Part shown: one piece after another, positions 20,700 to 37,500 of the stretch
Numbering within the stretch: the stretch's first letter is position 1
Layout: every line of letters begins with the position of its first letter
DNA from: Dimorphilus gyrociliatus
Lineage: Eukaryota; Animalia; Annelida
Reading direction: 5' to 3'
Assembly (NCBI GenBank): GCA_904063045.1
Contig: CAJFCJ010000028.1
Coordinates: forward strand, 62,001 to 126,000
DNA length: 64,000 nucleotides
Position numbers and translations under genes: made by a program
Notes under the pieces: model-generated
Told to the model about the DNA's origin: nothing
Databases searched by the model: none
The model's input: the letters and a program-made list of their open reading frames with translations, nothing else

Positions 20700-23600
20700 A
20701 TGGCACCAAAACAAACAGGTTTGATCCTTTACATTCTTAATTTACTTACGGAGAATCCAACGATCCCTTACCAGATAGATAATCGATTAACAATCTTTAA
20801 TTGGTAAATTTACAAATTAATTGAATGACAATTGGGATTTATTCGTTTCTCAGAATATTTATATTTGTTATCTGACAGTAGTAGGTTAAATGGATTTCTT
20901 CTCCACGTAGATCAATACGTACCCGTGCTATGAATGACCGATATATAATTTAAAAAAACCTCACTCCTTATAATGATTTATTATGACATTCTTTATGAGA
21001 AAGTTGAGCAATTTTCGAATACTTTCAGTATTTCTTACATATGCGAATAGCATATTTAAATACATTCGACTCGTTGATATATAGCAGCTACTTTCCTGAT
21101 TAAAGTGTATACGCTTTCGTCTTATAAGCTTTTTGTGTGTACTGCTCCCATTCAATTTGTTTTTTGAGATTTTCAGATGAATAACTCGTATTTATTGACC
21201 TCTTTAAATTCGTTATTAAACTTATAAAGCTAACATTTCTAAATATATTGATTTAACGATAAAACTATAAACGTGAAAAGAGGAAAAAATAGATAAACTT
21301 TCAACATTTATTATTTATCACAAATGGAAAGAATATATAGGCAGATATAAAGTTTTTCCTATTCGCAAACTCGAACAAACTATATATACAGTATAGCTAT
21401 ATATTTAGATGTAAATAATACAGAAAAATAAAGAAAAATACTCACCTGGAGTGTTTTTCTAGTAGTGAATCAATACTAATTGTCCTCAATAATATTAATA
21501 CCTTTTTTTTTTTATTAATTAACTAACTAATTAATTTATTGTAGAATGATAAAGAGATTTTCTTGTTTTGACAAATATGAACCACTTATATCTTGAAGAT
21601 ACAAAAAAAATCATAAAAAAGCAAATATCTGTTAAAAAGATGAGAATTGTTTGTCTCTCTATTTTCATACTCTATTGTATATTACTGTTCAGCGGCACAT
21701 CTGTCAAGATTGTTTAAATTGGTTGTATTAAATTTAATTAGTTTACTTCCCTTAGCAACGTGGAAAAATTCAATATTTCTAACATGCTTTCTTTTCTGTC
21801 TGCCTTGCCCCTACCCTCCCCTCTTTCTCTTGATCTGCCCCAGCTCTCTTATTTTCCACCACCCCTTCTGTCTTGTATTTTTCTTAATTATTTCGTATAT
21901 AATGAATTATTTAACGATCCAATTCGATTTCCATCTCATTTGCTTGAATAAAGTCGAGCGAACTATGACAAAACAAAAAGAGGACAGAAGCCCGTCCTTA
22001 TCGAGCGTCACGTCATCGAGCGTCCTGTTGAACAACGATCAGTTAACACCTCGTATTGACGTCGGTTTGGTAACGTCTGATCAAAACGATATTCCTCTTA
22101 ATCAGTTAGTTCGTTCAAAAGCGAGCTTAGATAAAAATCATTCTCGTCGTCGATCAAAGAAATTAAGAAAAAAGGCTTCAGTCAAACTTGACAGTTACAT
22201 AGACGATCTAAATTACTCAAAAGTCGTAAAGACACTACCTAAAACTAACAACACAGTGAAAGAAAGAGGAACTCAAACTCTTAACAATACTCCATCCGAG
22301 AGGAACATCTTGGACATAAGAGATTATTATAAACAACTCGATGAGGAAAAACGAATAAAAGAGGAAGAAGAAGCCAAGTTAGCAAAAGAAGAAGAGCAAG
22401 AGCAAACTGAGAAAAACGAAAAAGATAGCCAATTAAAAGAAATTATTGAAAGTATAGCCAACCACGAAAAAGGAGTATGTAAAATTGAGCTAGTGCACCA
22501 ACTATTAGGCTTAAAATATGATGATGGATGTCTAAACATAAAAGTTGAATGTGCCTGCGAAACTTGTACTTATAAAATCGACGAAATGCCGTCTAAAATG
22601 GATAATAAATGGACTCAAACCCGAATAAAAACGAATAAAATCATTCCAATTTTAACCAGTACACGCAATTAATATCAATATAATATAATATTATTTTGAC
22701 TTAAGTTTTATCTATTGAATAATAATTAAAATATTTTTTAATCTAAACAGAACAACAAAGACATATTAGAGCTAATGATCCTGTATATAATGCTTCATTT
22801 CGATATGCAGTGAGTATACTCTTAGATTATTATCATAAACAGGTACAAAATGATAATCATATCGTCTGTCTTTAAAATTTATTTTTAGGTTTTATTAAAC
22901 TTGTAAAATATTTATAGTCAATAGAAATAGTGTAGCTTTTTATAATAATATTCATATTCTTCATCTAACACGTTTTAAAAGGTTCAAATAGCGTATACAT
23001 TTACTTGGCTTTTTATTATGCTATTATAAAAAATACTACATGATTGCGAGGTAGATAAAGCATAGCAGGTTATATAGTTATAATTGTGCTTTATGCTTTA
23101 TATAGTATATAGTGTATATAGAAAGTAATATATTACGTTATTATACAGAGGTGCTACCACTGGCAATTGAAATCTAACAGATGATTTTATACATCTAAAT
23201 ATTAATTATTTAAATATTAACATAGTGACTCTTGAAAAGAGTAGGGAAGAGGAAAATTTCTTCTTTTTTTTACTTTTCCTAAAATTTTAAAATACTAATA
23301 TATTAATAATAGAATTTCTTAAAGTATTAACTAATTAATTAAATATTTTATAATTTTTTGTTAAAAACGAAAGTATAAGCTGATTGATTAGCCTAAAATA
23401 TTTAAATACAATGTATACTGCACATATAAGTAAATATTATATTAAACTAGTATATATACAGTACAATAGGTATGAATAATCTAAATCTAAATTGAAAATT
23501 CTTAATTGTATAATTAATTTATTTATATATTCAATTCGTATAGCGCTATACTAATTAAATCATTTAATTAAAATATAGATAATACTTAACTATCTCAATA

Positions 23601-26600
23601 GAATTAATTTAAAATATTCATAAGAGAAATAAAATTCAATAAGAAAGGGATGTCCGTTAAATAGTGTATTTATTTTAAGTAACGATTTATAGATGCTGTC
23701 TTGTTTATATATATATATATATATATATATAAACCTAACCTTCTCACATACACTTTTAACATTTTTCCATTGAAAATCTACATATATATACATTATATAT
23801 ATAAATATATCTATCAGCATGTATATATCTTTTTACATAATGAAATTAACCATACAGAAAAATTAAAATATGTATTTCTATACTTGTTTACTAATTTTAT
23901 TTAAATATTTTCTTTCTTTTCTAGAATAATCATATATCCACATCAAAGTACAACTTTTTAACTTTTATACCGAAAAATTTATTTGAGCAGTTCCAGAGAT
24001 TGGCAAATGCCTATTTTCTTGCTCTTCTTATCCTTCAGGTATGTTTCTCTCTTTTTGAAGCTATTAGTATACTTTTATAAAGTTCCCTTTACATTTATAC
24101 TAATGTATACCACCTATATCTTTAAATAATTAAGAAATGATTCTTTATCAGTAGGTTAAGTATGTTTAGTTAATTATTGCAGCTTATACCACAAATCTCG
24201 TCATTAAGTTGGGTGACAACAATCTTACCTCTAGCTATAGTTCTAATTCTGACGGCAACAAAAGATGCTGTTGACGATTTTGTAAGCAAAATCCATACCC
24301 ACGCATTGTATAATATTTCTATCCTTATGTTGAAAGGAAACTGTTTAGGACGGGTTTATGGGTGTTTTTAATTGTAATGGTCTTATCTTTTTTTAATGGT
24401 TATCGGTGTATTATTACAACGTTTTTTAGTACAGTACCCAAGGTATTATTGCATATTAAATACTAATATACTTGTATATGCAGTATATATATTTTCCTAT
24501 GCAAACATTGGTTTCTTTCTACATCTATAAGTTACTAATAATACAATTAGTTAAGTACAAAATTTTATAGGCTGTTGTTTATTAGTTTTTATGATATTAT
24601 TTAGTGATATAAATAAATGCCTATTATATATGTCAGTATATTAAAGTAGGAAATGTATGCATATAACATATATGTATGTATGATTTTTTTTATATATAAA
24701 ATATACTGTAGTAACACAGCAAGAATCTACAAACACGCGGGCATACACACATATATAGTGTACAAACAAATATGCAAATACTGTATATAAATTTATACAT
24801 TGTATATATTAGTATACGCTGTATATATATATATATAAAATATTATATTAATAAGTATTAATATACAATTATTCTTAAAACATTTATACATTTATTGAAA
24901 ATAATTTTTTCTATAAATTACAAAAAAAAAAAATAACAATAGCTGATACCCGCTATATCATCGTTAACACCTGCTACCACAATAGTACCCTTATTTGCCG
25001 TTATATCTTTGACGGCATTGAAAGATATTATTGATGATATTGTAAGTCTAATAATCAAGATTGTATTAAAAAAAATGAATTAAATGTGTTTTCTTTTGCG
25101 CACCCATTTTTGTAACGAAATATCATGTTCATAGTGTAGAATTTTTGTTTTAAATATTCATCATTGCTATATTTGTAAACTCACGTTTATTGAATCTTAT
25201 ATTTCTAATTATTTTCTTCAATGTTGTGTTGATATTATACAGTTAATTCCTCAAATTTCATCTCTCACTCCACTTACGACCATTGTTCCTTTGGTGGCCG
25301 TGCTAACCGCAACGGCCATCAAAGATCTCTTAGACGACATTGTAAGTTTATTTCGATAGATTAAAAATAAACTATCAGCTAAAAGAGTATAGCAATATGA
25401 TTCAACTAATTATCTTGTTGTAACTTTTGTTTCAAAGATATAGTTTTTTTTCCAAAGGTTTACTTATTAAATATCCTCTATCTTTCGTTATTTTATTGTT
25501 TGTCCAATATTAATAGGAATGTATACAAGTAAAGGATTTTACAACCAATTTCCTAATATTAGTTCACTTCTAGAAACTTAATCTTGCTTAATGAGAAGTG
25601 TGAAAGTGATAACAGATACCAAACAAAGCAGTTGATATTAATAGTATTGAACTTATGGTATTTATACATATTTTGAAAACATTCTATAGGATAAAATAGG
25701 AAAACTGGACAAAAAACAAAACGAAGATATCTAGTCGTTTTGTATTCCTTTCATTCTTATGTCTAGTTAATTGATTACTTTATTTTTCTTTCTCTCTGTT
25801 TCTGTTTTATTCCTTTCTTTCAATTCCATTCCTCTGTATTTCAAATTTCAATAAACTTTTTTTTTTATCTCCAACATAAATTATGTATAGTACCGTTAGT
25901 TAATTGTAATTGTTTAACAGGGCCTGTTTCATTCGCATTTTCATCGACTAGCTAAAAGTTGTCATATATATATAATTAATCAAAATTACCTTTAAGTGGG
26001 CATAAACTATTTTATACGTCATATATAATTTTAAATTGAGATTGAATAGTGGCTAAATTAAAAATATTTTAGATAGATTGAAATTAGCATTTACTTCTAA
26101 TTGAAAAATCCTCTCTAATTAAAAAAATGAAGAATTCCATTTAATACATCTAACATTAAAGTATTACATGAATTTATTATATTTCGAATTCAAACAGGGG
26201 AAAAAAAGTAATAACAGCATTTTTCAATTAATAATTAATATTTATTAATGAATATATGGACTTATTAATAACTGATTCTTTCTAAAACAGTTCTAATGCT
26301 GTTGGTAATGTAAGAAAAAAAATTTCGTACGAAATAAGCTTGTACTAAGTCATCGTTTTTCTTGTTAAGCAAGTTAGAAAATGTTGTTTATAGACTTTTA
26401 TTATGATTCTTAGTGTTTTTACAAGTAATTGAAAGGTAAAATTGTATTATTGAATTATCTACTACCTTTTTTCCATATTCAACTTCTATTCTTTCGACAG
26501 TTCAATAAAGTAGACACAATAATATTACATTATAAAGTTCACTTTTATTCAAACATTAACGAATAAAGTTCATAGAACTTTTTAATGAATGCTTATTGTT

Positions 26601-29600
26601 CGATTTTCTATACTAGAAACAACGAAAATGAAATCTATGAATAAGGCCTAGAAAAAAATATTTTTTTATTCAACACCTTTTCCTTCGCTTCCTGTTGAGG
26701 TCGAATGATTTCGATCTCTTCCTCGCCACTTTGTTTACTCGTCATTTCCTACAGTAATAGTCTTTTTAAATTATTGATTATCTGATTGTCATTGCTAGAC
26801 TACAGCTATTCAGAAATATTTCTCGTTAGCGCTTAATTATTTACTCTTTTGAAAGAAAAGTAAAAAGGCTGGTTCAGTATTATAAAATTATAATATCATT
26901 TAAAAATAAGGGTTTTTTGGTGAATTTTCTTCGTTTTTCCTAATAAAAACAGTCTATTATTTTGACAACTGGAGTATTTTTGATACCGATTTAGTACTTA
27001 TAGATAAATTAACAGTTGTTTAATCATCAAATATACTAAAAGTGGATCAATTTAGATAGTTGGCTATCTTTCAATAAATGTATTTCCACATCAGAATATA
27101 AGGTAGGTGTAGAATAGGAAAGAAGAGACTCTGAAATCGAAGTATATGAGTAGATTACTACTTTATTTGCGTGTTCTATTTATATTAATATATATATACT
27201 TATACGCAATGGTATCTAGTCACACAGTATTTGGACAGAAGGAGGAAACTGTTAAATCTTGATGATAGCTTTCATCTATTATATTAAATAATTCTTGCTA
27301 TGGATTTACTCTGCAAGCAATTTCTTCTCCCTTTTATTTCTTTTTCTTCCCTTAATATTGTTTATTTATATCTTATTTTATTTCCATTAATTACGTGTTA
27401 GTTATATACAAAATTGAACTATAATTCATGGTTGATAACAAGCTTTTATAAATATAAATAGGCGAGACAAACAAACTTCTTATTTCTACAATACTATTTA
27501 TATCTCCCTTTTATTTAGTGCTTAAATACGAAAACAAAATATTAATACTTAAACCTTTGGAAATATTAACTCTTTAGATAACTATTACTTTTATTCTGGC
27601 CATTAATAGTAGAGCAACTGGCTAAAATATAAACAAAATTAGACCAGTTTGTTTTAGCACGTGATATGTTTATTAAAAGAGAATAAATTGGTCATCTTTC
27701 ACTGGCTTTCTAGTTTTGTTTATATATATATTTGTTATATTGTCCTGTATGCTAGTGATACTAGTTTTAATGCTTTGAAAAATATTGAAATTATAAGGAA
27801 AAAATATAAAATCATTAAATATCTTAATCATTCCTCACGCTTGTATAATTACTTTATTGAAATATTTCTTTAGTATTTTGTTGCATGTCTTTTTGAAAAC
27901 AAAAATAGTACATACATCTTTTAGATACCTATCTACGAGTATGTAATACAGTATATATATATACATATATAAATATATTTGTATATATGTATATAAATAT
28001 AGATATACATATAATTGCTATTCATTTATAACAATGGCTTATGTAATAGTAATCATCTAATAGATAACTTTAAAAAAAGAAAATGTATTGTATTAATTAA
28101 TGCTTAGAATGCTTTATAAAAAATTTTTTTTCTATTCTTTTTCAAGCTTCAATTGTTAAGTTTCTTTTATCTTTTTTTCTTATGATTTTGATATGGGCAC
28201 CAGTCTAATTATCCTTAGTTATGCTTATTTCGTTCAATTTTCTTCACCTCTATTATTATTTGACTTTTCTCTATAAATAACTTTAGTATTATCATTATAA
28301 ATCATTTTGGAAATTATTACTTTAGAGACGTCATAGAAGTGATAGTCAAGTAAATAATAGGGAATCATATGTACTGAGAAATGGAGAATTTGTTGAAGAA
28401 AGATGGCACAAAGTGGTCGTTGGAGATATCATCAAAATGGAAAACAATCAATTTGTCGCTGCCGATTTGTTTCTTCTATCTTCTTCCGAAGAGTCAGAGT
28501 TGATTTACATCGAAACTGCCGAATTGGATGGGGAAACCAATTTGAAAGTTCGACAATGCATTCCTGATATATCCTGCTACAAAGATGACCAAACAAAATG
28601 GGGGAATTTTAATGGCGAAATAACTTGTGAACCTCCAAATAATAACTTGAATAAGTTTAATGGCTATTTAAGCTACAACAATAGAAAGTTTCCAGTGTCC
28701 AATGATCATATGCTTCTAAGAGGGTGCGTCTTACGTAACACATCATGGTGTTACGGTATGGTAGTCTATGCCGGTAAAGATTCAAAGCTGATGATGAATA
28801 GCGGTCCGTCAAAATTCAAAAGAACACACATTGATCGTTTAATGAATATCCTAATAGTTGGAATATTTTGCTTTCTTGCGTTGATGTGCCTTATATGTAC
28901 CGTGGCTTGTGGAGTATGGGAGACAATTATTGGGTATGATTTCCAAAAATATCTTCCTTGGGATAGTTATGTTCCAGGATCTATTGCGAAAAGTGACAAA
29001 TCTGGGTCAAAGAATGCAGGAGCGGCAGTCATCGCTCTATTAGTCTTTCTCTCTTACGTGATCATTTTAAATACCGTAGTGCCTATATCGTTGTATGTCA
29101 GTGTGGAAATTATTCGTTTCGTGCACTCACAATGGATCAATTGGGATATAAAATTATACCATGAAAAAACCAATACTCCTGCATTAGCGAGAACAACAAC
29201 CCTTAACGAAGAATTGGGGCAAATAGAATACATATTTTCCGATAAGACGGGAACGCTAACTCAGAATATAATGACTTTCAATAAGTGTACCATTAATGGT
29301 GTTTCGTACGGACTACCATATGATGATGATGGAAGACCTATGGAAAAACCTAAGCTTGTAGATTTTAAAATCAATAACAAATATGGCGATACAAATCTGG
29401 AATTTTATGATCATCGTTTGTTATACAAGATTAAGAGGGGCGACGAGAGTTGCCAACTATTTTTTAAACTGTTATCCCTTTGCCATACTGTTATGGCCGA
29501 AGAAGAAGATGGTGAAATTGATTATCAAGCTCAGTCACCTGACGAAGAGGCCTTAGTTAGTGCTGCTAAGAATTTTGGTTTTGTCTTTAAGGTAAGTCAA

Positions 29601-32600
29601 ATATAATTTTGTTTTCTATGTCTACAATTACATTTTAATTGCGTGTGTGTTGAAATTTATAGTCAAGAGAACCTCGACAAATCGAAATAGAAGTTGGGGG
29701 AGAAATCGAAGTACATAAGATCCTTGCTATATTAGATTTCAACAATGTTCGTAAAAGAATGTCTGTTATTACGGAAAAGGATGGACAAATTAGATTATAC
29801 TGTAAAGGAGCGGATACAATGATTTTTCAACGACTTTCCCCGGAGTGCGAAGAACTAAAGACAATCACAATTGAACATCTAGATGTAAGTTTGCTGATCT
29901 ATTTTAAAAAGAATAGTTTTTTTTTTATAAGTCTATAAATCGAATAACAGGAAATAAATGAGAGGAAATATGCAAATTTATACTTTTATCTTTCTTTTCT
30001 CAGGAATTCGCTGGGGAAGGACTGAGAACTCTCTGTTTGGCTTATAAAGACATCGATAAGCCCACTTTCGATGAATGGATGGAAAAGTTTGATGAGGCTG
30101 CATCAGCTTTAGAAAATCGAGAAGAACTCCTCGACGAAGTTTACGAGGAAATTGAGCAAAATATGACGCTTATCGGAGCGTCTGCTATTGAGGACAAGCT
30201 TCAAGACGGTGTTCCAGAAACGATTGCCAATTTAGCCCTTGCTGATATCAAGATTTGGGTTTTGACAGGTGATAAGCGTGAGACCGCAATCAATATTGGC
30301 TACAGTTGTAAACTATTAACGGACGAGATGGCAGATATATTTGTTATTGAAGAAGATGATGAAAATTTAGTGAGAGAGGGTCTCAAATCGGCGTATAACA
30401 AAATAAAAAACTTTAATAGTAAAACCAACCAAAAGCCTGGTCAAGAAGGAAATCATTTCACCAATCCCCAAATGAACATTGGCGATTCACAGGCTCATGG
30501 AGGTTTCGCACTAGTCATAACAGGAACAAGTTTATATTATGCATTACAAAAAAATATGGAAAAGTTGTTTTATGAAACTGCTTCTTCATGTAAAGCTGTT
30601 GTTTGCTGTCGAGTTACACCAGGTCAAAAAGCTTTGGTTGTATCCCTTGTTAAGAATTACAAAAAAACTATTACACTTGCAATAGGAGATGGAGCTAATG
30701 ACGTTTCAATGATTCGAGGTTAGTGGACGTTTCTTTCTTCTGTATTTAGAAAGATATGTCTTTCACCTATCTTCTTTCTTGTCCGTCTTACTTCCTATAT
30801 TATTTATATAAAATGGAAATTTTACATTCCTCGAAAGATTTTCATCATTCTGATAGATCATGCGATGGAGCGTGTTATTGTAGCCATTATAGTATCATAT
30901 GAAATGTCTAGCAATATCTCTAAAGATATTGTTACCTTTATCTATTTGACTTTAATTATTTAATTTATTACTTAATCGTTGAAATAAATTATTAATGCTT
31001 TCTTTTTTTTTATTTATATACAGAAGCCCATATCGGAGTGGGTATAAGTGGACAAGAAGGAATGCAAGCCGTCTTAGCATCTGACTTCTCCTTGGCGCAG
31101 TTTCGTTTTCTAGAACGTTTGTTATTGGTTCATGGACGATGGTCTTACTTGAGAATGTGCAAATTTATGAAATATTTCTTTTACAAAAATTTCGCATTTA
31201 CTTTATGCCATTTTTGGTTCGCCTTCTTTTGTGGATTTTCTGCACAGGTATTAAGAATATATAATCTCTTTCTTTCTCGATTTTATTACATAAAAAAACG
31301 TATGAAACTATTTTCCTTCTTTTTTTCACTAAGTGAAGTCAAAAAGTTATCACGAGTGATATATTTTTACCGGATTATATAAAGAATTAGGCACAATCAA
31401 TATTTATTATCATTGTCATCAATTTTAAGTGCATGATTTTTTTTTTAAGATGTAAAATTTTAATTTCCAGACGTTATTCGATCCGTTTTTTATCTCCTTC
31501 TACAACGTTCTCTACACATCTTTTCCAGTTTTAGCATTGGGGATTTTTGATCAGGTAAAATAAATGAAAATATCGGAAATTGGAACGTTGTCATGTTTTT
31601 TTCTTTTCAATTAATATTGAATTGCTTTGCATATTCCTTCTTTTTAATTTTGGGAATGTGATTGCTCTTTTCTTCCTTCTTCTATTTGATTTTATTCATT
31701 TACACTTATTTTTTTTTACTTACTTTCAGTTTCTACTAAATGAGTCTCTTCTCATTTTTAATATTTATTTCCATTGTAGCTTTAACTATCCCTTTTCCAG
31801 GCTTTTTATGACGAAGTGTTTATTTCTCTCTACAATGTCTGCTATACTTCTCTTCCTATCCTTGCTCTTGCTGTGTTTGAACAGGTTTCCCTTGTTTGGT
31901 TCCCATCCCTCTCTTTATTCCGTACACTTTTATTCTTCTTTTTTTTTATTTTTTTTTTGCAGCATGACAATAATGGCTCCAGATAGCTTACCCCTAAAGA
32001 ATAACTGTCACTTTCTATTTAACAATGCTTTCTCTTTACTTTTCTTTTTCTTAGAAACTAACTTTTTTATAAGCTTGTCATCTTTTGTATTGTTTCCCTT
32101 GCGAAAAAATATAGAGAAAGAAATGATTCTAAAATTTAATTACTGTCACTTCTTTCTTTTCAAGGGAAAAATTATTTGAAAATCTTTAGGAAAGAGAGTC
32201 TTTTCACTAGTTTTTCTTTATTTTCTGGTAAAAAATTTGAAATCTCATAAATTTTTTATAGTTTTCGATAGAGTTTGTATAATAAGACGTTCTAATTTAT
32301 TTAATAATGCAAAAAGAAAGCAAAAATACCGATTATAGACTTTAATAGATTTCTCTTTTCTAAGACATAAAATCAAAAGATAAACAACTAAATTGGATTA
32401 ATTTTAAGATAAATATCTTGAGCTAACGAAAACGAATAACTTATTTGCAGGATGTAAACGAACGCTACTCTCTGCAATATCCGAAATTGTACAAACCGGG
32501 ACATTTGGATTTATTATTTAATAAGAAAGTCTTCGCGCAATCAGTTGGTGAAGGAGTACTTTCATCTCTTGTACTTTTCTTTATTCCATACGGAGCTTTT

Positions 32601-33236
32601 CACGATGCTATTCGACCGAATGGCCACGATCTTGATTCTCATAATGTGTTAGGTGTTGTCGTAGGTCCGTTTACTTTAACGATAATTGAAGGAGGGTAAA
32701 ATAATTGATTATTTTTCTTTGAAGGCTCAATTTTAATTGTTGCCATGACGATACGATGTGCTTTGGATACTGCGTATTGGACTGGGCTTAATCATTTTGT
32801 GATCTGGGGATCGATTCTTTTCTATTTTGGATTTACTTTCCTATTTTATATCGATACCTGGGGATATTCTTACTTGGGAACAGCACGTCAATTGATGAGC
32901 ACTGGTCTTTTCTGGTTAACTCTATTGCTTACTGTGGTCATTATAATACTGCCAGTAATAGCTGAGCGGTTTTACTACATCGACACCCGTCCGACATTGA
33001 CAGATAAAATTAGATTGAAGCAGAAGATTAGCAAGAGTAAGTCAGCATCTAAAGAATTGACCCGAAGTCAATTCTTGAGACGTTCTAATAAAACGCTGCG
33101 AAGAAGTGGCTATGCATTTGCCCACGAAGAAGGTTTTGGAAAACTTATCACATCCGGTGTAATGAGACCATCAACTGCGGGATCTTTTAGATCAAGAAAA
33201 AGCGCGAGACGGAGAACCTCAGTTGCCGTCAATTAA
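20700..33236 (+). CDS. ATP8B: P4-ATPase phospholipid flippase, ATP8B subfamily
   Basis: Exons 20700-20718 (probable start), 22751-22809, 23925-24038, [one of 24183-24281 / 24943-25041 / 25243-25341], 28326-29591, 29663-29884, 30004-30718, 31024-31247, [one of 31471-31554 / 31801-31884], 32451-32664, 32725-33236. Motifs [33 protein letters not shown], and C-terminal [13 protein letters not shown]. Confidence 0.95.
21965..22672 (+). CDS. Orphan 235-aa ORF inside an early ATP8B intron; alternative N-terminal exon or nested gene
   Basis: Coding-like composition from ATG 21965 (the ORF-track start at 21647 adds low-complexity sequence). A phase-1 donor at 22659 would join ATP8B exon 22751 in frame. 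Confidence 0.55.
   Translation: MTKQKEDRSPSLSSVTSSSVLLNNDQLTPRIDVGLVTSDQNDIPLNQLVRSKASLDKNHSRRRSKKLRKKASVKLDSYIDDLNYSKVVKTLPKTNNTVKERGTQTLNNTPSERNILDIRDYYKQLDEEKRIKEEEEAKLAKEEEQEQTEKNEKDSQLKEIIESIANHEKGVCKIELVHQLLGLKYDDGCLNIKVECACETCTYKIDEMPSKMDNKWTQTRIKTNKIIPILTSTRN
24183..24281 (+). other. ATP8B TM2 alternative exon A ([33 protein letters not shown])
   Basis: 99 nt, phase 0/0, ttgcag acceptor, gtaagc donor. Confidence 0.9.
24943..25041 (+). other. ATP8B TM2 alternative exon B ([33 protein letters not shown])
   Basis: 99 nt, phase 0/0, caatag acceptor, gtaagt donor, homologous to exon A. Absent from the ORF track. Confidence 0.88.
25243..25341 (+). other. ATP8B TM2 alternative exon C ([33 protein letters not shown])
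   Basis: 99 nt, phase 0/0, atacag acceptor, gtaagt donor, homologous to exons A and B. Absent from the ORF track. Confidence 0.88.
31471..31554 (+). other. ATP8B TM6 alternative exon A ([28 protein letters not shown])
   Basis: 84 nt, phase 0/0, ttccag acceptor, gtaaaa donor. Confidence 0.88.
31801..31884 (+). other. ATP8B TM6 alternative exon B ([28 protein letters not shown])
   Basis: 84 nt, phase 0/0, ttccag acceptor, gtttcc donor, homologous to TM6 exon A. Confidence 0.85.
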
Positions 33237-34568: not shown

Positions 34569-37500
34569 TTAAATTATTGTAGTGTCTTGCGGTTGAACGA
34601 TTCGCATGTTTCGTCGTCTTCGACGTCTCCTCGAACCAGTTTGAGACGTAAAAGTCACTTTTCTTTCAACTATTTCAAACGGCCTTAAACAAAACGCCTG
34701 TAATGATAAGAGAATTTAAAGGGAAATTGTAAATTTGCAATTCCAAGGTTTTTCGTTTAAGCTCATACTGTATTTGAATTAATAAGTCGAATAATCCCTA
34801 CATCTATTGAGAATTAAACAAGAGATTGTAACCGAAATTTATACAGAATAACCTTTGTTGAGTATTTTCAATTAAAGAGTCAAGTTAATTAGTTATCTAG
34901 TCAATAATTATCCCAAACGTCATCAATTTGCTGCCCCCTTAAAAGGAAAGGCTTCTCTTTTGGGCTTCTCAATTAACCGTAAAACTTGCTTTTTTTTTTT
35001 TAATTCAGTATAAGCCTAAAAGTTTCTTTATCTTGATATTTTGCTAAATTGGAATACACTTAGAAAGAAATCCATTCCAATAGGCGGTAGGGGGTGGAAA
35101 GGAGAAAATAGACAGGGGTTATAGAAGTACGAAAAAATAGATGAAGAAAGAATGTTTTCAACTTTGAAATTTTCACTAATTGCATTCCGAATTTCGTTGG
35201 AACTCTTGGTAGTTTCTAATTGACTAAAATGCCTCATCTTCACTTGAAAACCGTCGTTTTATTAAACAAATAAAATTTGTACGCTATTTATACAAATCGA
35301 TGGAAAGACTGGAATAGATTAACTCTCCTACTTGGACCTCTATAAACAACTTTTAAAAGCGACCGAGAACAGCTTTAGCAAGTCGTATTTCGTTTCATCA
35401 TTGGTAAATCGAGATAAAAATACAGAAAATTCTCTTACCCTATCCGATGGAAGGAGTATAAAATTATGCGGTGGATTCGTAATAACATATCTCTTAGTGG
35501 TAGATGGCTGTCCAGGATCTCTTAATCTATAAAGCCCAATACATAAAATACTATAAGTCCTTAAGGCGGCAGTAAATAAATCCCCATATCTGCCATTATC
35601 CGCAAATTTGACCAAAGGCCCGTCGTAAAGTGACAATTGAGCTACTCTGCACCTGTGTCTATTCGTGAAAGTTGTGAGATCGCATACTCCTCCCCTCATA
35701 CCCATTCCCTCGGCTAGAATTTGCTCCAATTCAGGCGTTGCTCCCCCAGTTATTAGAGTTCTTATTAAAGTCAATGCATTGTCGTTGAAATAAGTTGTTG
35801 ACATGAGAGAATCTAAGACAGAAACCGCAAAAGCATTTCCACAAGCAAAAGGCTGAGTGATGTACAATTCCGTATTCGGATCGTCGTCATCGTCCTAAAA
35901 ATAAAATAATGAAAAAGCATTAAATTTCAAATTGGTTTAACGGAATAAATCAATTACAGACTTTGCAGGACAAATTAACTTCTTTTCTAATATCTAAACA
36001 AACATTATTACTATTATATAATGACGTTTCTATTCAAATATCAAATATACCGACAAAAAGAATTTGTAAGAATACTAAAAACTCCTTCTACGATCTAGCC
36101 TCAGAACATGGAAAATGAGAATAACGAACAACTACGTTACATAGATTAAATATACCTTCTAGTCATTCGGTTTGCAATTTTAAAACCTTTATTAGTTTAT
36201 TATGTTCAGTTACATATCTAAGTACATAATATAGATAATCTAGTCGTTTAGATCAAGATCTTCATCGTTATTTTATCTTCTGTTCTCTTTCATATCATAA
36301 AATTCGATGCAAAGATTATCCTTACCTGATCTAAGAATTGTACGTTCGCATCATTTCCTAATTCAGTTATCATAGGTATATCGATTCCTTTTTGGTCTTC
36401 AAATGTCATTGCTTTAATATTTAAAGAACATAAAATAGCTTCCTTGTCTACAAGACTAGAATCATCAACAGCTCTCCTAGAACTTAGAATAACGCACATA
36501 TCGCATAGATGTACGTTTACTGCTCTCAAATTCGCCCTATTCAAAGGAGATCCGTCTAAAATCACTATTTTCGGAAAGTTTGATAAAGTTTTCCATTCTT
36601 TTCTTATATATTCTCTATCACCAACAAGAATAATTTCCTTTAATTCGTTGAGATGAAAATTCGACGCTCTTAATGGCATAACAAAATTTCTCAGACCTAT
36701 GAATTTGGAAAGAAAACATACAAATATTATTCAAACGCAAAAATAAACGATTGCCTTCAAGAAACTTATGTTATCTTTTATTGTTTAATTTACGAAAATA
36801 CTTATATATATATATACTGTATTTATGGAATAACTGCATAGAAACAACTGTAAGCTTCTTACAAGGAATAGGCCTATTACGATTTGCAAATCCTAAAAAG
36901 GTAGTTCGTATACTAAGTCTTATTCTATTTCCCTCGGCACTTTATCAAATAACTAGGCCTAACACCAAGAACCGTCAAATCAGCACTACGATTTCATCGT
37001 TAAAAAGCTACATTGCCTTTGGTTGCAATGATCACGGCTTCACAGATATTAGAAGAAAGAAGAGAACAATAGAATGAATAAAAAAGACAAAAAAGCTAAA
37101 GCTTTGTACTGGGAATACCATTTGGAGATTTATATTTCTCATATAGCCATAATTGAAAGAACTTTAAAGTTTTTTTCCCCTATTCAGTTTATAGAAACTT
37201 TTCCATATTTTGACTTTGAAATATAAACCAAATATAAAGAACTAGTCGAATTATCTGTTTTAAGTATTTTAGCATTAAAAAATTATACATATACTAGTAA
37301 TATAGCAATTATATTATCTATGAAACAAAAGAAAAGAAACAGAAAGAAATAGAGCTGGAAGATTAATAGCTTGAAAAATTAAAAATAGGAATCATAAGGG
37401 CAAAAGGTAAAAGTTCAGTGAAAGATAAATGAGAAAAAGGAAAATTATCTATAAATCTTTGAAAATGTTTGTTGTTCTTTCTATTTCTTTTGCGTCTTTG

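What the first reader, a model, noticed from the sequence alone, without database searches (positions are those of the whole stretch)
24183..31884. Combinatorial mutually exclusive splicing of the lipid-binding pocket of a P4-ATPase flippase (3 x TM2, 2 x TM6)
Seen: one ATP8B gene has two separate clusters of tandem duplicated exons, three for the TM1-2 loop/TM2 and two for the TM5-6 loop/TM6, all intact with canonical splice sites; every other exon is single copy. Established: in P4-ATPase structures (ATP8A1, Drs2, Dnf1) TM1, TM2, TM4 and TM6 line the exoplasmic head-group entry site, and residues there tune PS/PC/GlcCer selectivity. Inference: only pocket-lining helices were duplicated, so one locus could yield up to 6 flippases with different lipid specificity or CDC50 coupling. 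This would be a splice-based counterpart to the vertebrate ATP8B1-4 gene expansion. I do not know of a description of this arrangement, but could not search the literature.
Basis: partly seen in the sequence, partly recalled or inferred. Interest (0 to 1): 0.92.

Follow-up and report, generated by a model that had tools for sequence, protein, structure and literature searches.

The report
Flippase gene with swappable membrane helices
One lipid-flipping pump gene carries three alternative copies of the exon for its second membrane helix and two for its sixth, an arrangement I also found in molluscs, ribbon worms and an annelid, so one gene can make pumps that differ only in the walls of the lipid entry site.

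Summary
An ATP8B-type P4-ATPase gene (+ strand, about 20700-33236) has three 99-nt exons for the TM1-2 loop plus TM2, and two 84-nt exons for the TM5-6 loop plus TM6. All five have AG/GT borders and are in frame. No other exon is duplicated.

The copies are old. Synonymous sites are saturated while the proteins stay 57-73% alike.

The arrangement is not private to this genome. Gastropods, bivalves, octopus, two nemerteans and the annelid Owenia hold 2-4 TM2 copies. Owenia and the nemertean Lineus also hold two TM6 copies. Millipede, rotifer and amphioxus have one of each.

RefSeq already lists equal-length isoforms that swap only this exon in more than ten species. Lineus has four TM2 variants and one TM6 variant. 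That supports mutually exclusive use.

In this animal's public RNA, the main transcript uses TM2c plus TM6a. The TM2a acceptor is used at roughly a fifth of the TM2c level. TM2b and TM6b were not seen spliced.

A change in lipid specificity is plausible from published structures but untested. I found no paper describing this. The nearest precedents are human ATP8A1 and ATP10B entries in a supplementary table. It is a new variant of a known kind. The scan's other notes on these exons lie on this same window.

The parts
20700..20718 (+). Probable first coding exon (MAPKQT, ends before GT)
   Evidence: Matches the N-terminus of P0298, a transcript-derived protein of a close relative. Inferred only; no joint was seen.
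22751..22809 (+). Coding exon 2 ([20 protein letters not shown])
   Evidence: tblastn with P0298. RNA contigs of X1 and X6 carry its last 30 nt directly before 23925.
23925..24038 (+). Exon for the N-terminal segment and most of TM1 (single copy)
   Evidence: tblastn. RNA joints run from 24038 to TM2a and to TM2c.
24183..24281 (+). TM2a: alternative exon 1 of 3 (end of TM1, TM1-2 loop, TM2). It has the 'SLSW' loop found in vertebrate ATP8B proteins.
   Evidence: 99 nt with AG/GT borders. The joint 24038->24183 appears in run X6 at depth 125. The joint to the downstream exon was not seen.
24943..25041 (+). TM2b: alternative exon 2 of 3
   Evidence: 99 nt with AG/GT borders and an intact frame. 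It is 79% identical to Owenia TM2 copy 1. No RNA cover in 4 runs. Only a DNA run holds its words. The acceptor is A-rich.
25243..25341 (+). TM2c: alternative exon 3 of 3, the default form ('SLTPLTT' type)
   Evidence: Joints 24038->25243 and 25341->28326 appear in X6 (depth 582 and 1280) and in X1. The same type is used in the relative's transcript P0298.
28326..29591 (+). Large exon: A domain (DGET), TM3, TM4 (PISL) and the phosphorylation site (DKTGT)
   Evidence: ORF listing, tblastn and RNA joints.
29663..29884 (+). N-domain exon
   Evidence: RNA joints and tblastn.
30004..30718 (+). N/P-domain exon (TGDK, GDGAND)
   Evidence: RNA joints. Pfam Hydrolase hit.
31024..31247 (+). P-domain end and TM5 exon (single copy)
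   Evidence: RNA joints and tblastn.
31471..31554 (+). TM6a: alternative exon 1 of 2 (TM5-6 loop and TM6), the default form
   Evidence: 84 nt with AG/GT borders. Joints 31247->31471 and 31554->32451 lie in the X6 main contig at depth 1280. The same type is used in P0298.
31801..31884 (+). TM6b: alternative exon 2 of 2
   Evidence: 84 nt, AG acceptor, weak GTTTCC donor. Its best match anywhere is Owenia TM6 copy 2 (0.68), in the same order. In RNA it was seen only inside an unspliced contig.
32451..32664 (+). TM7 exon
   Evidence: RNA joints.
32725..33236 (+). Last coding exon (TM8-10 and C-terminal tail, stop at 33234-33236)
   Evidence: RNA joints. Pfam PhoLip_ATPase_C hit. Frame check.

Best explanation
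This is the animal's ATP8B-type (class 1b) P4-ATPase lipid flippase gene. Two of its exon positions hold arrays of tandemly duplicated, homologous exons, and I read them as being spliced one at a time (mutually exclusive exons). Three versions encode the end of TM1, the exoplasmic TM1-2 loop and TM2. Two versions encode the TM5-6 loop and TM6. Every product has the same length and the same catalytic core and differs only in two helices that wall the lipid entry and occlusion site. The default product is TM2c+TM6a, and the other versions are minor or restricted to tissues or stages.

Shown here: the exon anatomy; the age of the copies and the purifying selection on them; the same arrays in molluscs, nemerteans and an annelid; annotated one-exon-at-a-time isoforms in those relatives; use of TM2c, TM6a and the TM2a acceptor in this animal.

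Inferred: TM2b and TM6b are spliced in somewhere in this animal (about 0.75). The two clusters combine freely (about 0.5). The variants change which lipids are flipped, as opposed to changing rate, regulation or membrane context (about 0.4).

How exclusivity is enforced is unknown. Frame and nonsense-mediated decay cannot do it, because 99 and 84 are multiples of three. I found no U12-type sites and no competing RNA pairing. Regulated splice-site choice is the likeliest mechanism, backed by selection against proteins with an extra or a missing helix.
For: Anatomy and intact frames.

P4-ATPase identity: best hits are ATP8B / 'ATPase ID' / TAT-2 proteins. The full Pfam architecture is present in the 93%-identical relative P0298. 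The exons map to human ATP8B1 residues 132-164 and 978-1005.

Old copies under constraint: pS is 0.59-0.90 against pN of 0.21-0.30. Each copy is about as similar to orthologues of other phyla as its sisters are.

Comparative arrays, all with AG/GT borders and identical exon borders: Candidula 2 TM2 copies, Lottia 2, Tubulanus 4, Lineus 4 TM2 and 2 TM6, Owenia 4 TM2 and 2 TM6.

Equal-length RefSeq isoforms differ only in this exon in Patella, Haliotis, Littorina, Pomacea, Biomphalaria, Crassostrea, Mytilus, Octopus and Lineus.

RNA in this animal: joints exon 3->TM2c->next exon, exon 3->TM2a, and TM5->TM6a->next exon.

Structural role of TM1, 2, 4 and 6: PMC12424579 and PMC10657443.
Against: No spliced read or contig contains TM2b or TM6b in the runs available. 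The TM2a-containing contig runs on into the intron, and no joint from TM2a to the next exon was listed. TM2b has a poor acceptor tract and TM6b has a poor donor. The residues known to touch the lipid are identical in all copies: the TT pair of TM2, and the Asn and Thr of TM6 that correspond to ATP8B1 N989 and T993. Differences therefore lie in second-shell and loop positions. No functional data exist for any isoform in any species. Only assembled contigs could be laid, not raw reads, and contigs hide minor forms.
Confidence: 0.72

Rival explanations
1. The alternative exons are used, but they tune something other than head-group choice. Candidates are turnover rate, coupling of lipid occlusion to dephosphorylation (TM2 is the mechanical link to the A domain), autoregulation, fit to bilayers of different thickness or compartment, or contact with a different CDC50 subunit.
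For: All lipid-contacting residues named in the papers are unchanged between copies. The differences sit in the TM1-2 loop and on helix faces. PMC10657443 proposes allosteric transmission through TM2. It also reports that ATP8B1 already accepts most glycerophospholipids, which leaves little room for sharper selectivity.
Against: The loop position that differs most (W/Y against P at exon residue 10) lies at the mouth of the entry groove. Chimera and point-mutant work summarised in PMC12424579 places specificity determinants in TM1-4 and TM6. Nothing here separates the two readings.
Confidence: 0.3
2. In this species TM2b and TM6b are silent relics. The gene in practice makes one main product, plus a minor and possibly unproductive TM2a form.
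For: There is no RNA support for either exon. TM2b has a weak acceptor and TM6b a weak donor. The TM2a contig continues into the intron. Decayed copies do occur in such arrays: two TM2 pseudo-exons with stops lie in Lineus.
Against: Both exons keep frame, exact length, borders and all family-invariant residues despite saturated synonymous divergence. TM6b and Owenia TM6 copy 2 are reciprocal best matches (0.68), and TM2b is 79% identical to an Owenia copy. That is as conserved as, or better than, the rest of the protein at about 66%. Only one deep run, probably of whole animals, was available.
Confidence: 0.1
3. The exons are not mutually exclusive. Several are included together, or all are skipped, in normal transcripts.
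For: The lengths are multiples of three, so tandem inclusion or skipping keeps the frame and would escape nonsense-mediated decay.
Against: The main RNA contigs join exon 3 straight to TM2c and TM6a straight to the next exon, and no a-b, b-c or 6a-6b joints were listed. All RefSeq isoforms of the relatives that carry this segment hold exactly one copy. An extra or a missing helix would invert the topology of the rest of the pump.
Confidence: 0.03

Closest known systems
ATP8B-orthologue isoforms annotated in RefSeq for molluscs and the nemertean Lineus longissimus ('phospholipid-transporting ATPase ID-like isoform X1-X7')
   Same: Same gene, same exon borders (99 nt and 84 nt), and same kind of exon swap. 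Lineus has four TM2 variants and two TM6 variants, which matches the two-cluster layout seen here.
   Different: Copy numbers differ: 2-4 TM2 copies, and molluscs and Tubulanus have a single TM6. In Lineus the default TM6 is the downstream copy, whereas here it is the upstream one. These isoforms are database entries only. I found no paper that describes them.
Human ATP10B TM1-TM2 exon with a predicted mutually exclusive partner, and the annotated human ATP8A1 mutually exclusive exon pair (Hatje et al. 2017, PMC5740500, supplementary tables)
   Same: These are P4-ATPases with homologous alternative exons. The ATP10B pair covers TM1-TM2, the same part of the pump. Both pairs are listed with tissue-dependent usage.
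   Different: They belong to other P4-ATPase classes. ATP8A1's pair lies in the A domain, not in a membrane helix. The ATP10B pair has unequal lengths (195 and 249 nt) and is only a candidate. Each gene has a single cluster, and neither involves TM6.
Bovine ATPase II (ATP8A1) splice isoforms (Ding et al. 2000, J Biol Chem 275:23378)
   Same: By its title, isoform variation affects ATPase activity and phospholipid specificity of a P4-ATPase. That is the functional idea proposed here. The paper is cited.
   Different: I could not read the paper. Which segments vary in those isoforms is from my memory only and is not verified.
Mutually exclusive exon arrays that swap pore or pocket segments in channels and motors (Dscam, myosin heavy chain, CACNA1C, SLC8A1; reviewed in PMC5740500 and PMC7954323)
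   Same: These are tandem homologous exons of equal length and phase. One is chosen per transcript, which changes a functional surface while the fold is kept.
   Different: Here the protein is a lipid pump. Two separate helices that face the same substrate site are swapped from two clusters. No docking or selector RNA pairing was detected.
Vertebrate ATP8B1-B4 paralogues
   Same: Diversity within the same protein family. TM2a has the 'SSLSW.TT' loop found in every vertebrate ATP8B sequence checked.
   Different: Vertebrates diversify by whole-gene duplication. All their copies have the W-type loop, and none has the 'TP' type that is the default here and in arthropods and amphioxus.

Membership tests
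P4-ATPase (lipid flippase), ATP8B / class 1b | P-type ATPase core motifs: DKTGT phosphorylation site, DGET in the A domain, TGDK and GDGAND in the P domain | tested here: met
   The exon translations hold [30 protein letters not shown] and [12 protein letters not shown].
P4-ATPase (lipid flippase), ATP8B / class 1b | P4-specific domains PhoLip_ATPase_N and PhoLip_ATPase_C, and the PISL motif in TM4 | tested here: met
   [11 protein letters not shown] lies in the large exon. PF16212 hits the last exon of the window, and PF16209, PF16212, PF13246, PF00122 and PF00702 hit the 93%-identical relative P0298.
P4-ATPase (lipid flippase), ATP8B / class 1b | Closest relatives are ATP8B-type rather than ATP8A, 9, 10 or 11 | tested here: met
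   Best named hits are 'ATPase phospholipid transporting 8B', 'ATPase ID/IM/IC' and TAT-2. The best solved structures are all human ATP8B1.
P4-ATPase (lipid flippase), ATP8B / class 1b | ATP-driven lipid flipping with a CDC50 partner | not testable with these tools
   Needs biochemistry.
Cluster of mutually exclusive, tandem-duplicated exons | Neighbouring exons of the same length, same phase and same splice-site type, with sequence homology (criteria of PMC3228551) | tested here: met
   3 x 99 nt and 2 x 84 nt, phase 0, AG/GT borders, 57-73% amino-acid identity.
Cluster of mutually exclusive, tandem-duplicated exons | Each copy is a maintained coding exon | tested here: met
   pS of 0.59-0.90 against pN of 0.21-0.30. 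Conservation against Owenia copies and against other phyla.
Cluster of mutually exclusive, tandem-duplicated exons | Exactly one exon of the cluster in each mature transcript, and each exon used in some transcript | tested here: inconclusive
   In this animal, TM2c alone and TM6a alone are in the main transcript, the TM2a acceptor is used, and TM2b and TM6b were not seen. In the orthologues, the annotated isoforms that carry this segment hold exactly one copy each.
Cluster of mutually exclusive, tandem-duplicated exons | A known enforcing mechanism: frame/NMD, U2/U12 incompatibility, steric hindrance or competing RNA structures | tested here: not met
   The lengths are multiples of three. All donors are GT of U2 type. 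Introns between copies are 201-661 nt. Intron-intron duplex energies are within 1.1 SD of shuffles. This does not exclude membership, because many such clusters rely on protein regulators.

The most novel reading that the evidence does not exclude
Lophotrochozoan animals share an old, conserved module-swap system in their single ATP8B flippase: up to four TM1-2 loop/TM2 modules and two TM6 modules. With it, one gene toggles its lipid entry gate between a 'vertebrate-like' W-type loop and an 'arthropod-like' TP-type loop, and so makes pumps with different lipid preferences in different tissues. Evolution would then already have performed the helix-swap experiments that the field used to map flippase specificity.
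Probability: 0.3. Interest if true: 0.8.

Novelty: new variant of a known kind. Interest (0 to 1): 0.62.

Why it matters
Which parts of a P4-ATPase decide the lipid it flips is still debated. The evidence so far comes from artificial chimeras, point mutants and a few structures. This gene, and its orthologues across molluscs, nemerteans and annelids, offer natural variants of exactly the TM1-2 and TM6 segments on an otherwise identical pump, and selection has preserved them. Expressing the variants side by side would test directly what these helices contribute. It would also show how animals with a single ATP8B gene cover the roles that vertebrates divide among four paralogues. On the practical side, several genome annotations use only one copy of these exons, for example Tubulanus, Lottia and Owenia.

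Tried and rejected
1. Docking/selector RNA pairing. The inverted-repeat scan gave only AT-rich chance pairs. RNAduplex between the introns of both clusters gave z-scores of -1.1 to +0.7 against shuffles (an earlier script timed out).

2. Tandem inclusion in predicted proteins. None of 150 family representatives holds adjacent double copies.

3. An arthropod origin of the arrangement. It was rejected. Lobster, prawn, tick and horseshoe-crab isoforms do not vary in TM2. The millipede locus has single copies. The gene does not group with arthropods in a tree.

4. An origin in the bilaterian ancestor. It was not supported, because amphioxus has single exons.

5. Cross-phylum orthology of individual TM2 copies. 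A 33-residue tree resolves only within-phylum groups.

6. A junction search in JGI metagenomes for exon 3 joined to TM2a or TM2b gave one chance match, L008.

7. Fetching a close relative's DNA failed. P0162 returned no DNA, and P0001 and P0002 are not on record. The Panulirus gene is too long to fetch.

8. Literature. No paper links mutually exclusive exons with P4-ATPases or flippases. Ding et al. 2000 could not be read.

9. My second run search was made with kind 'any'. It therefore does not count as a search of RNA runs for TM2b.
Full report
WHAT IS THERE

The window is AT-rich (about 30% G+C) and comes from an animal. A P4-ATPase gene runs on the + strand from about 20700 to 33236.

I built its model in three steps. 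First, tblastn with homologues. Second, RNA contig joints. Third, a frame check. The model has twelve exon positions, and two of them hold several copies.

- Position 4 has three 99-nt exons: TM2a 24183-24281, TM2b 24943-25041 and TM2c 25243-25341.
- Position 9 has two 84-nt exons: TM6a 31471-31554 and TM6b 31801-31884.
- Every copy is bordered by AG and GT, starts in phase 0 and has no stop codon.
- No other exon has a second copy in the gene.
- Each of the six possible combinations gives an intact frame of equal length.

There are two small reservations. The TM2b acceptor follows an A-rich tract, and the TM6b donor is GTTTCC. Both are weak sites.

WHAT THE EXONS ENCODE

The best database relatives are ATP8B-type flippases ('ATPase ID/IC/IM', 'ATPase phospholipid transporting 8B', TAT-2). 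The core motifs DGET, PISL, DKTGT, TGDK and GDGAND are present.

P0298 is a transcript-derived protein of a close relative. It is 93% identical over the constitutive exons and has the full P4-ATPase Pfam architecture.

Against solved structures, the 99-nt exon aligns to human ATP8B1 residues 132-164. That covers the end of TM1, the exoplasmic TM1-2 loop and all of TM2. The 84-nt exon aligns to residues 978-1005, which cover the TM5-6 loop and TM6.

The review PMC12424579 states that substrate binds at an entry-gate site formed by residues of TM1, 2, 4 and 6, and that a conserved TM6 Asn binds the phosphate. PMC10657443 reports three things for ATP8B1:

- The head-group cavity is formed by TM1 and TM2.
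- TM1-2 close over the lipid on occlusion.
- N989 and T993 of TM6 line the canonical site.

One qualification matters. The TT pair of TM2 and the Asn and Thr of TM6 are the same in all copies. The copies differ in the loop (SW-V, TP-A or TP-L) and in about a dozen helix positions.

AGE AND SELECTION

Between copies, the proportion of synonymous differences is 0.59-0.90, which is saturated. The proportion of non-synonymous differences is 0.21-0.30. Each copy is about as similar to orthologues from other phyla as its sister copies are. These are old duplicates, and each has been kept as coding sequence.

THE SAME ARRAYS IN OTHER ANIMALS

This result changed the picture most. I fetched orthologous loci and searched them with the exon peptides. 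Copy numbers were as follows.

| Species | Group | Locus | TM2 copies | TM6 copies |
|---|---|---|---|---|
| Candidula | snail | L002 | 2 | not in locus |
| Lottia | limpet | L004 | 2 | 1 |
| Tubulanus | nemertean | L005 | 4 | 1 |
| Lineus | nemertean | L006 | 4 intact, 2 decayed | 2 |
| Owenia | annelid | L007 | 4 (the fourth lacks the KD..DD motif) | 2 |
| millipede | arthropod | L001 | 1 | 1 |
| rotifer | rotifer | L003 | 1 | not in locus |
| amphioxus | chordate | L009 | 1 | 1 |

The intact copies listed have AG/GT borders. The 99-nt and 84-nt exon borders are the same in every species.

TM6b of the window and the second Owenia TM6 copy are each other's best match (0.68), and they lie in the same order. 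The TM6 pair is therefore older than the split between those two lineages.

In a tree of the 33-residue TM2 segments, one gastropod variant groups with an octopus variant (support 98/91). The nemertean copies at equivalent positions also pair up. The TM2 arrays are therefore old within phyla. Orthology across phyla is not resolved.

The organism itself is not named by the tools. Its protein is closest to Owenia (66%) and Lineus (65%), and it falls outside arthropods in a tree. It is a lophotrochozoan, perhaps an annelid.

ARE THE EXONS USED ONE AT A TIME?

In relatives, yes, by annotation. RefSeq isoforms of equal length differ only in the 33-residue TM2 segment in these genera: Patella, Haliotis (two species), Littorina, Pomacea, Biomphalaria, Crassostrea, Mytilus and Octopus (two species). 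In Lineus, isoforms X1-X4 carry four different TM2 versions and X5 carries the other TM6 version. None holds two copies.

Arthropod isoforms do not vary in this segment.

In this animal I could only lay assembled contigs of public runs.

- Run X6 is deep, with exon depth of about 1300. It joins exon 3 to TM2c (depth 582) and TM2c to the next exon (depth 1280).
- X6 also joins exon 3 to TM2a (depth 125). That contig then continues into the intron, and no joint from TM2a onward is listed.
- The low-depth coral metatranscriptome X1 shows the TM2c path too.
- For the second cluster, the X6 main contig reads TM5 exon, TM6a, next exon. TM6b appears only inside an unspliced contig at depth 96.
- TM2b has no cover at all in four runs, and only a DNA run holds its words.
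- The relative's transcript P0298 also uses the TM2c and TM6a types.

So the default isoform is clear and TM2a is at least partly used. TM2b and TM6b remain unproven in this species. Contigs drop minor forms, so this is absence of evidence only.

MECHANISM

Shown: a single flippase gene whose TM2 and TM6 segments exist as conserved alternative modules.

Inferred: one module per cluster is chosen in each transcript. This gives up to six pumps with the same catalytic machinery and different walls around the lipid entry site.

How exclusivity is enforced is open. Frame and nonsense-mediated decay are excluded, because the lengths are multiples of three. The donors are ordinary U2 type. The introns between copies are 201-661 nt. 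No intron pairing stands out from shuffled controls. Regulated splice-site choice, with weak sites on the minor exons, is the likeliest answer.

What the variants change is untested. A shift in lipid preference is plausible, and I put it at about 0.4. A change in rate, regulation, membrane context or CDC50 contact is about as likely.

One suggestive detail concerns the TM1-2 loop. TM2a carries the 'SSLSW.TT' loop seen in every vertebrate ATP8B sequence I checked. TM2b and TM2c carry the 'SSLTP.TT' loop, which arthropods and amphioxus also have.

WHAT IS KNOWN

Full-text searches found no paper that links mutually exclusive exons with P4-ATPases or flippases.

The supplement of Hatje et al. 2017 (PMC5740500) lists two relevant human entries, both with tissue-dependent use. 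One is an annotated mutually exclusive pair in ATP8A1, in the A domain. The other is a candidate partner for the TM1-TM2 exon of ATP10B.

Ding et al. 2000 reported, by its title, that ATPase II isoforms differ in activity and phospholipid specificity. I could not read that paper.

The invertebrate isoforms sit in RefSeq without comment.

The kind of mechanism is therefore known, and the data for relatives are public. The two-cluster swap of entry-site helices in ATP8B, and its conservation across Lophotrochozoa, appear to be undescribed.

VERDICT

- It is a new variant of a known kind.
- Interest is moderate to high, because it offers natural, conserved helix swaps for a question the flippase field still argues about.

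The scan's other notes on these exons (s1-080839, s1-081884) lie on this same window. A further note reports exon arrays in other genes of this genome (s1-080181), which I did not test.

Noticed in passing
window 21647-22672 (+): A 341-residue open frame, Lys/Glu/Ser-rich and with no Pfam hit, lies inside intron 1 of the flippase gene on the same strand. It could be a nested gene or an alternative 5' exon.
   Followed up: partly
window 24816-25239: The deep run X6 has no contig at all over TM2b and both its flanks, although the neighbouring intron parts carry 11-56x and a DNA run holds the TM2b words. The stretch may be divergent or missing in that individual, or a filter may have removed it.
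   Followed up: no
window 31555-32450: Unspliced cover of the intron after TM6a, which contains TM6b, is 96x in X6. The intron before TM6a has 7-17x, and the long intron after TM2c has about 37x. This may reflect slow or regulated removal.
   Followed up: no
window 25449-25470 and 27542-27563: A 22-nt inverted repeat, 91% complementary, lies inside the 3-kb intron after TM2c. It could shorten the intron by looping. It is not a selector for the exon choice.
   Followed up: no
L006 23830-23928 and 23959-24057 (Lineus longissimus): Two decayed TM2-type pseudo-exons with stop codons lie next to the intact third copy. This indicates birth and death of copies within the array.
   Followed up: partly
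L005, L004, L007 (Tubulanus, Lottia, Owenia): The public gene models of these species use only one TM2 copy. The Tubulanus and Lottia models use the last copy, and the Owenia model uses the second. The extra intact TM2 exons, and in Owenia the second TM6 exon, are unannotated.
   Followed up: yes
L007 35091-35189 (Owenia): The fourth TM2 copy has good splice sites but lacks the conserved K-D..D-D end (SALWALLADI). It is either very divergent or decaying.
   Followed up: no
window 35340-35867 (-): A 175-residue open frame on the opposite strand looks, from my memory of the family, like part of the C-terminal region of a Slo/BK-type potassium channel. I did not check this with any tool.
   Followed up: no
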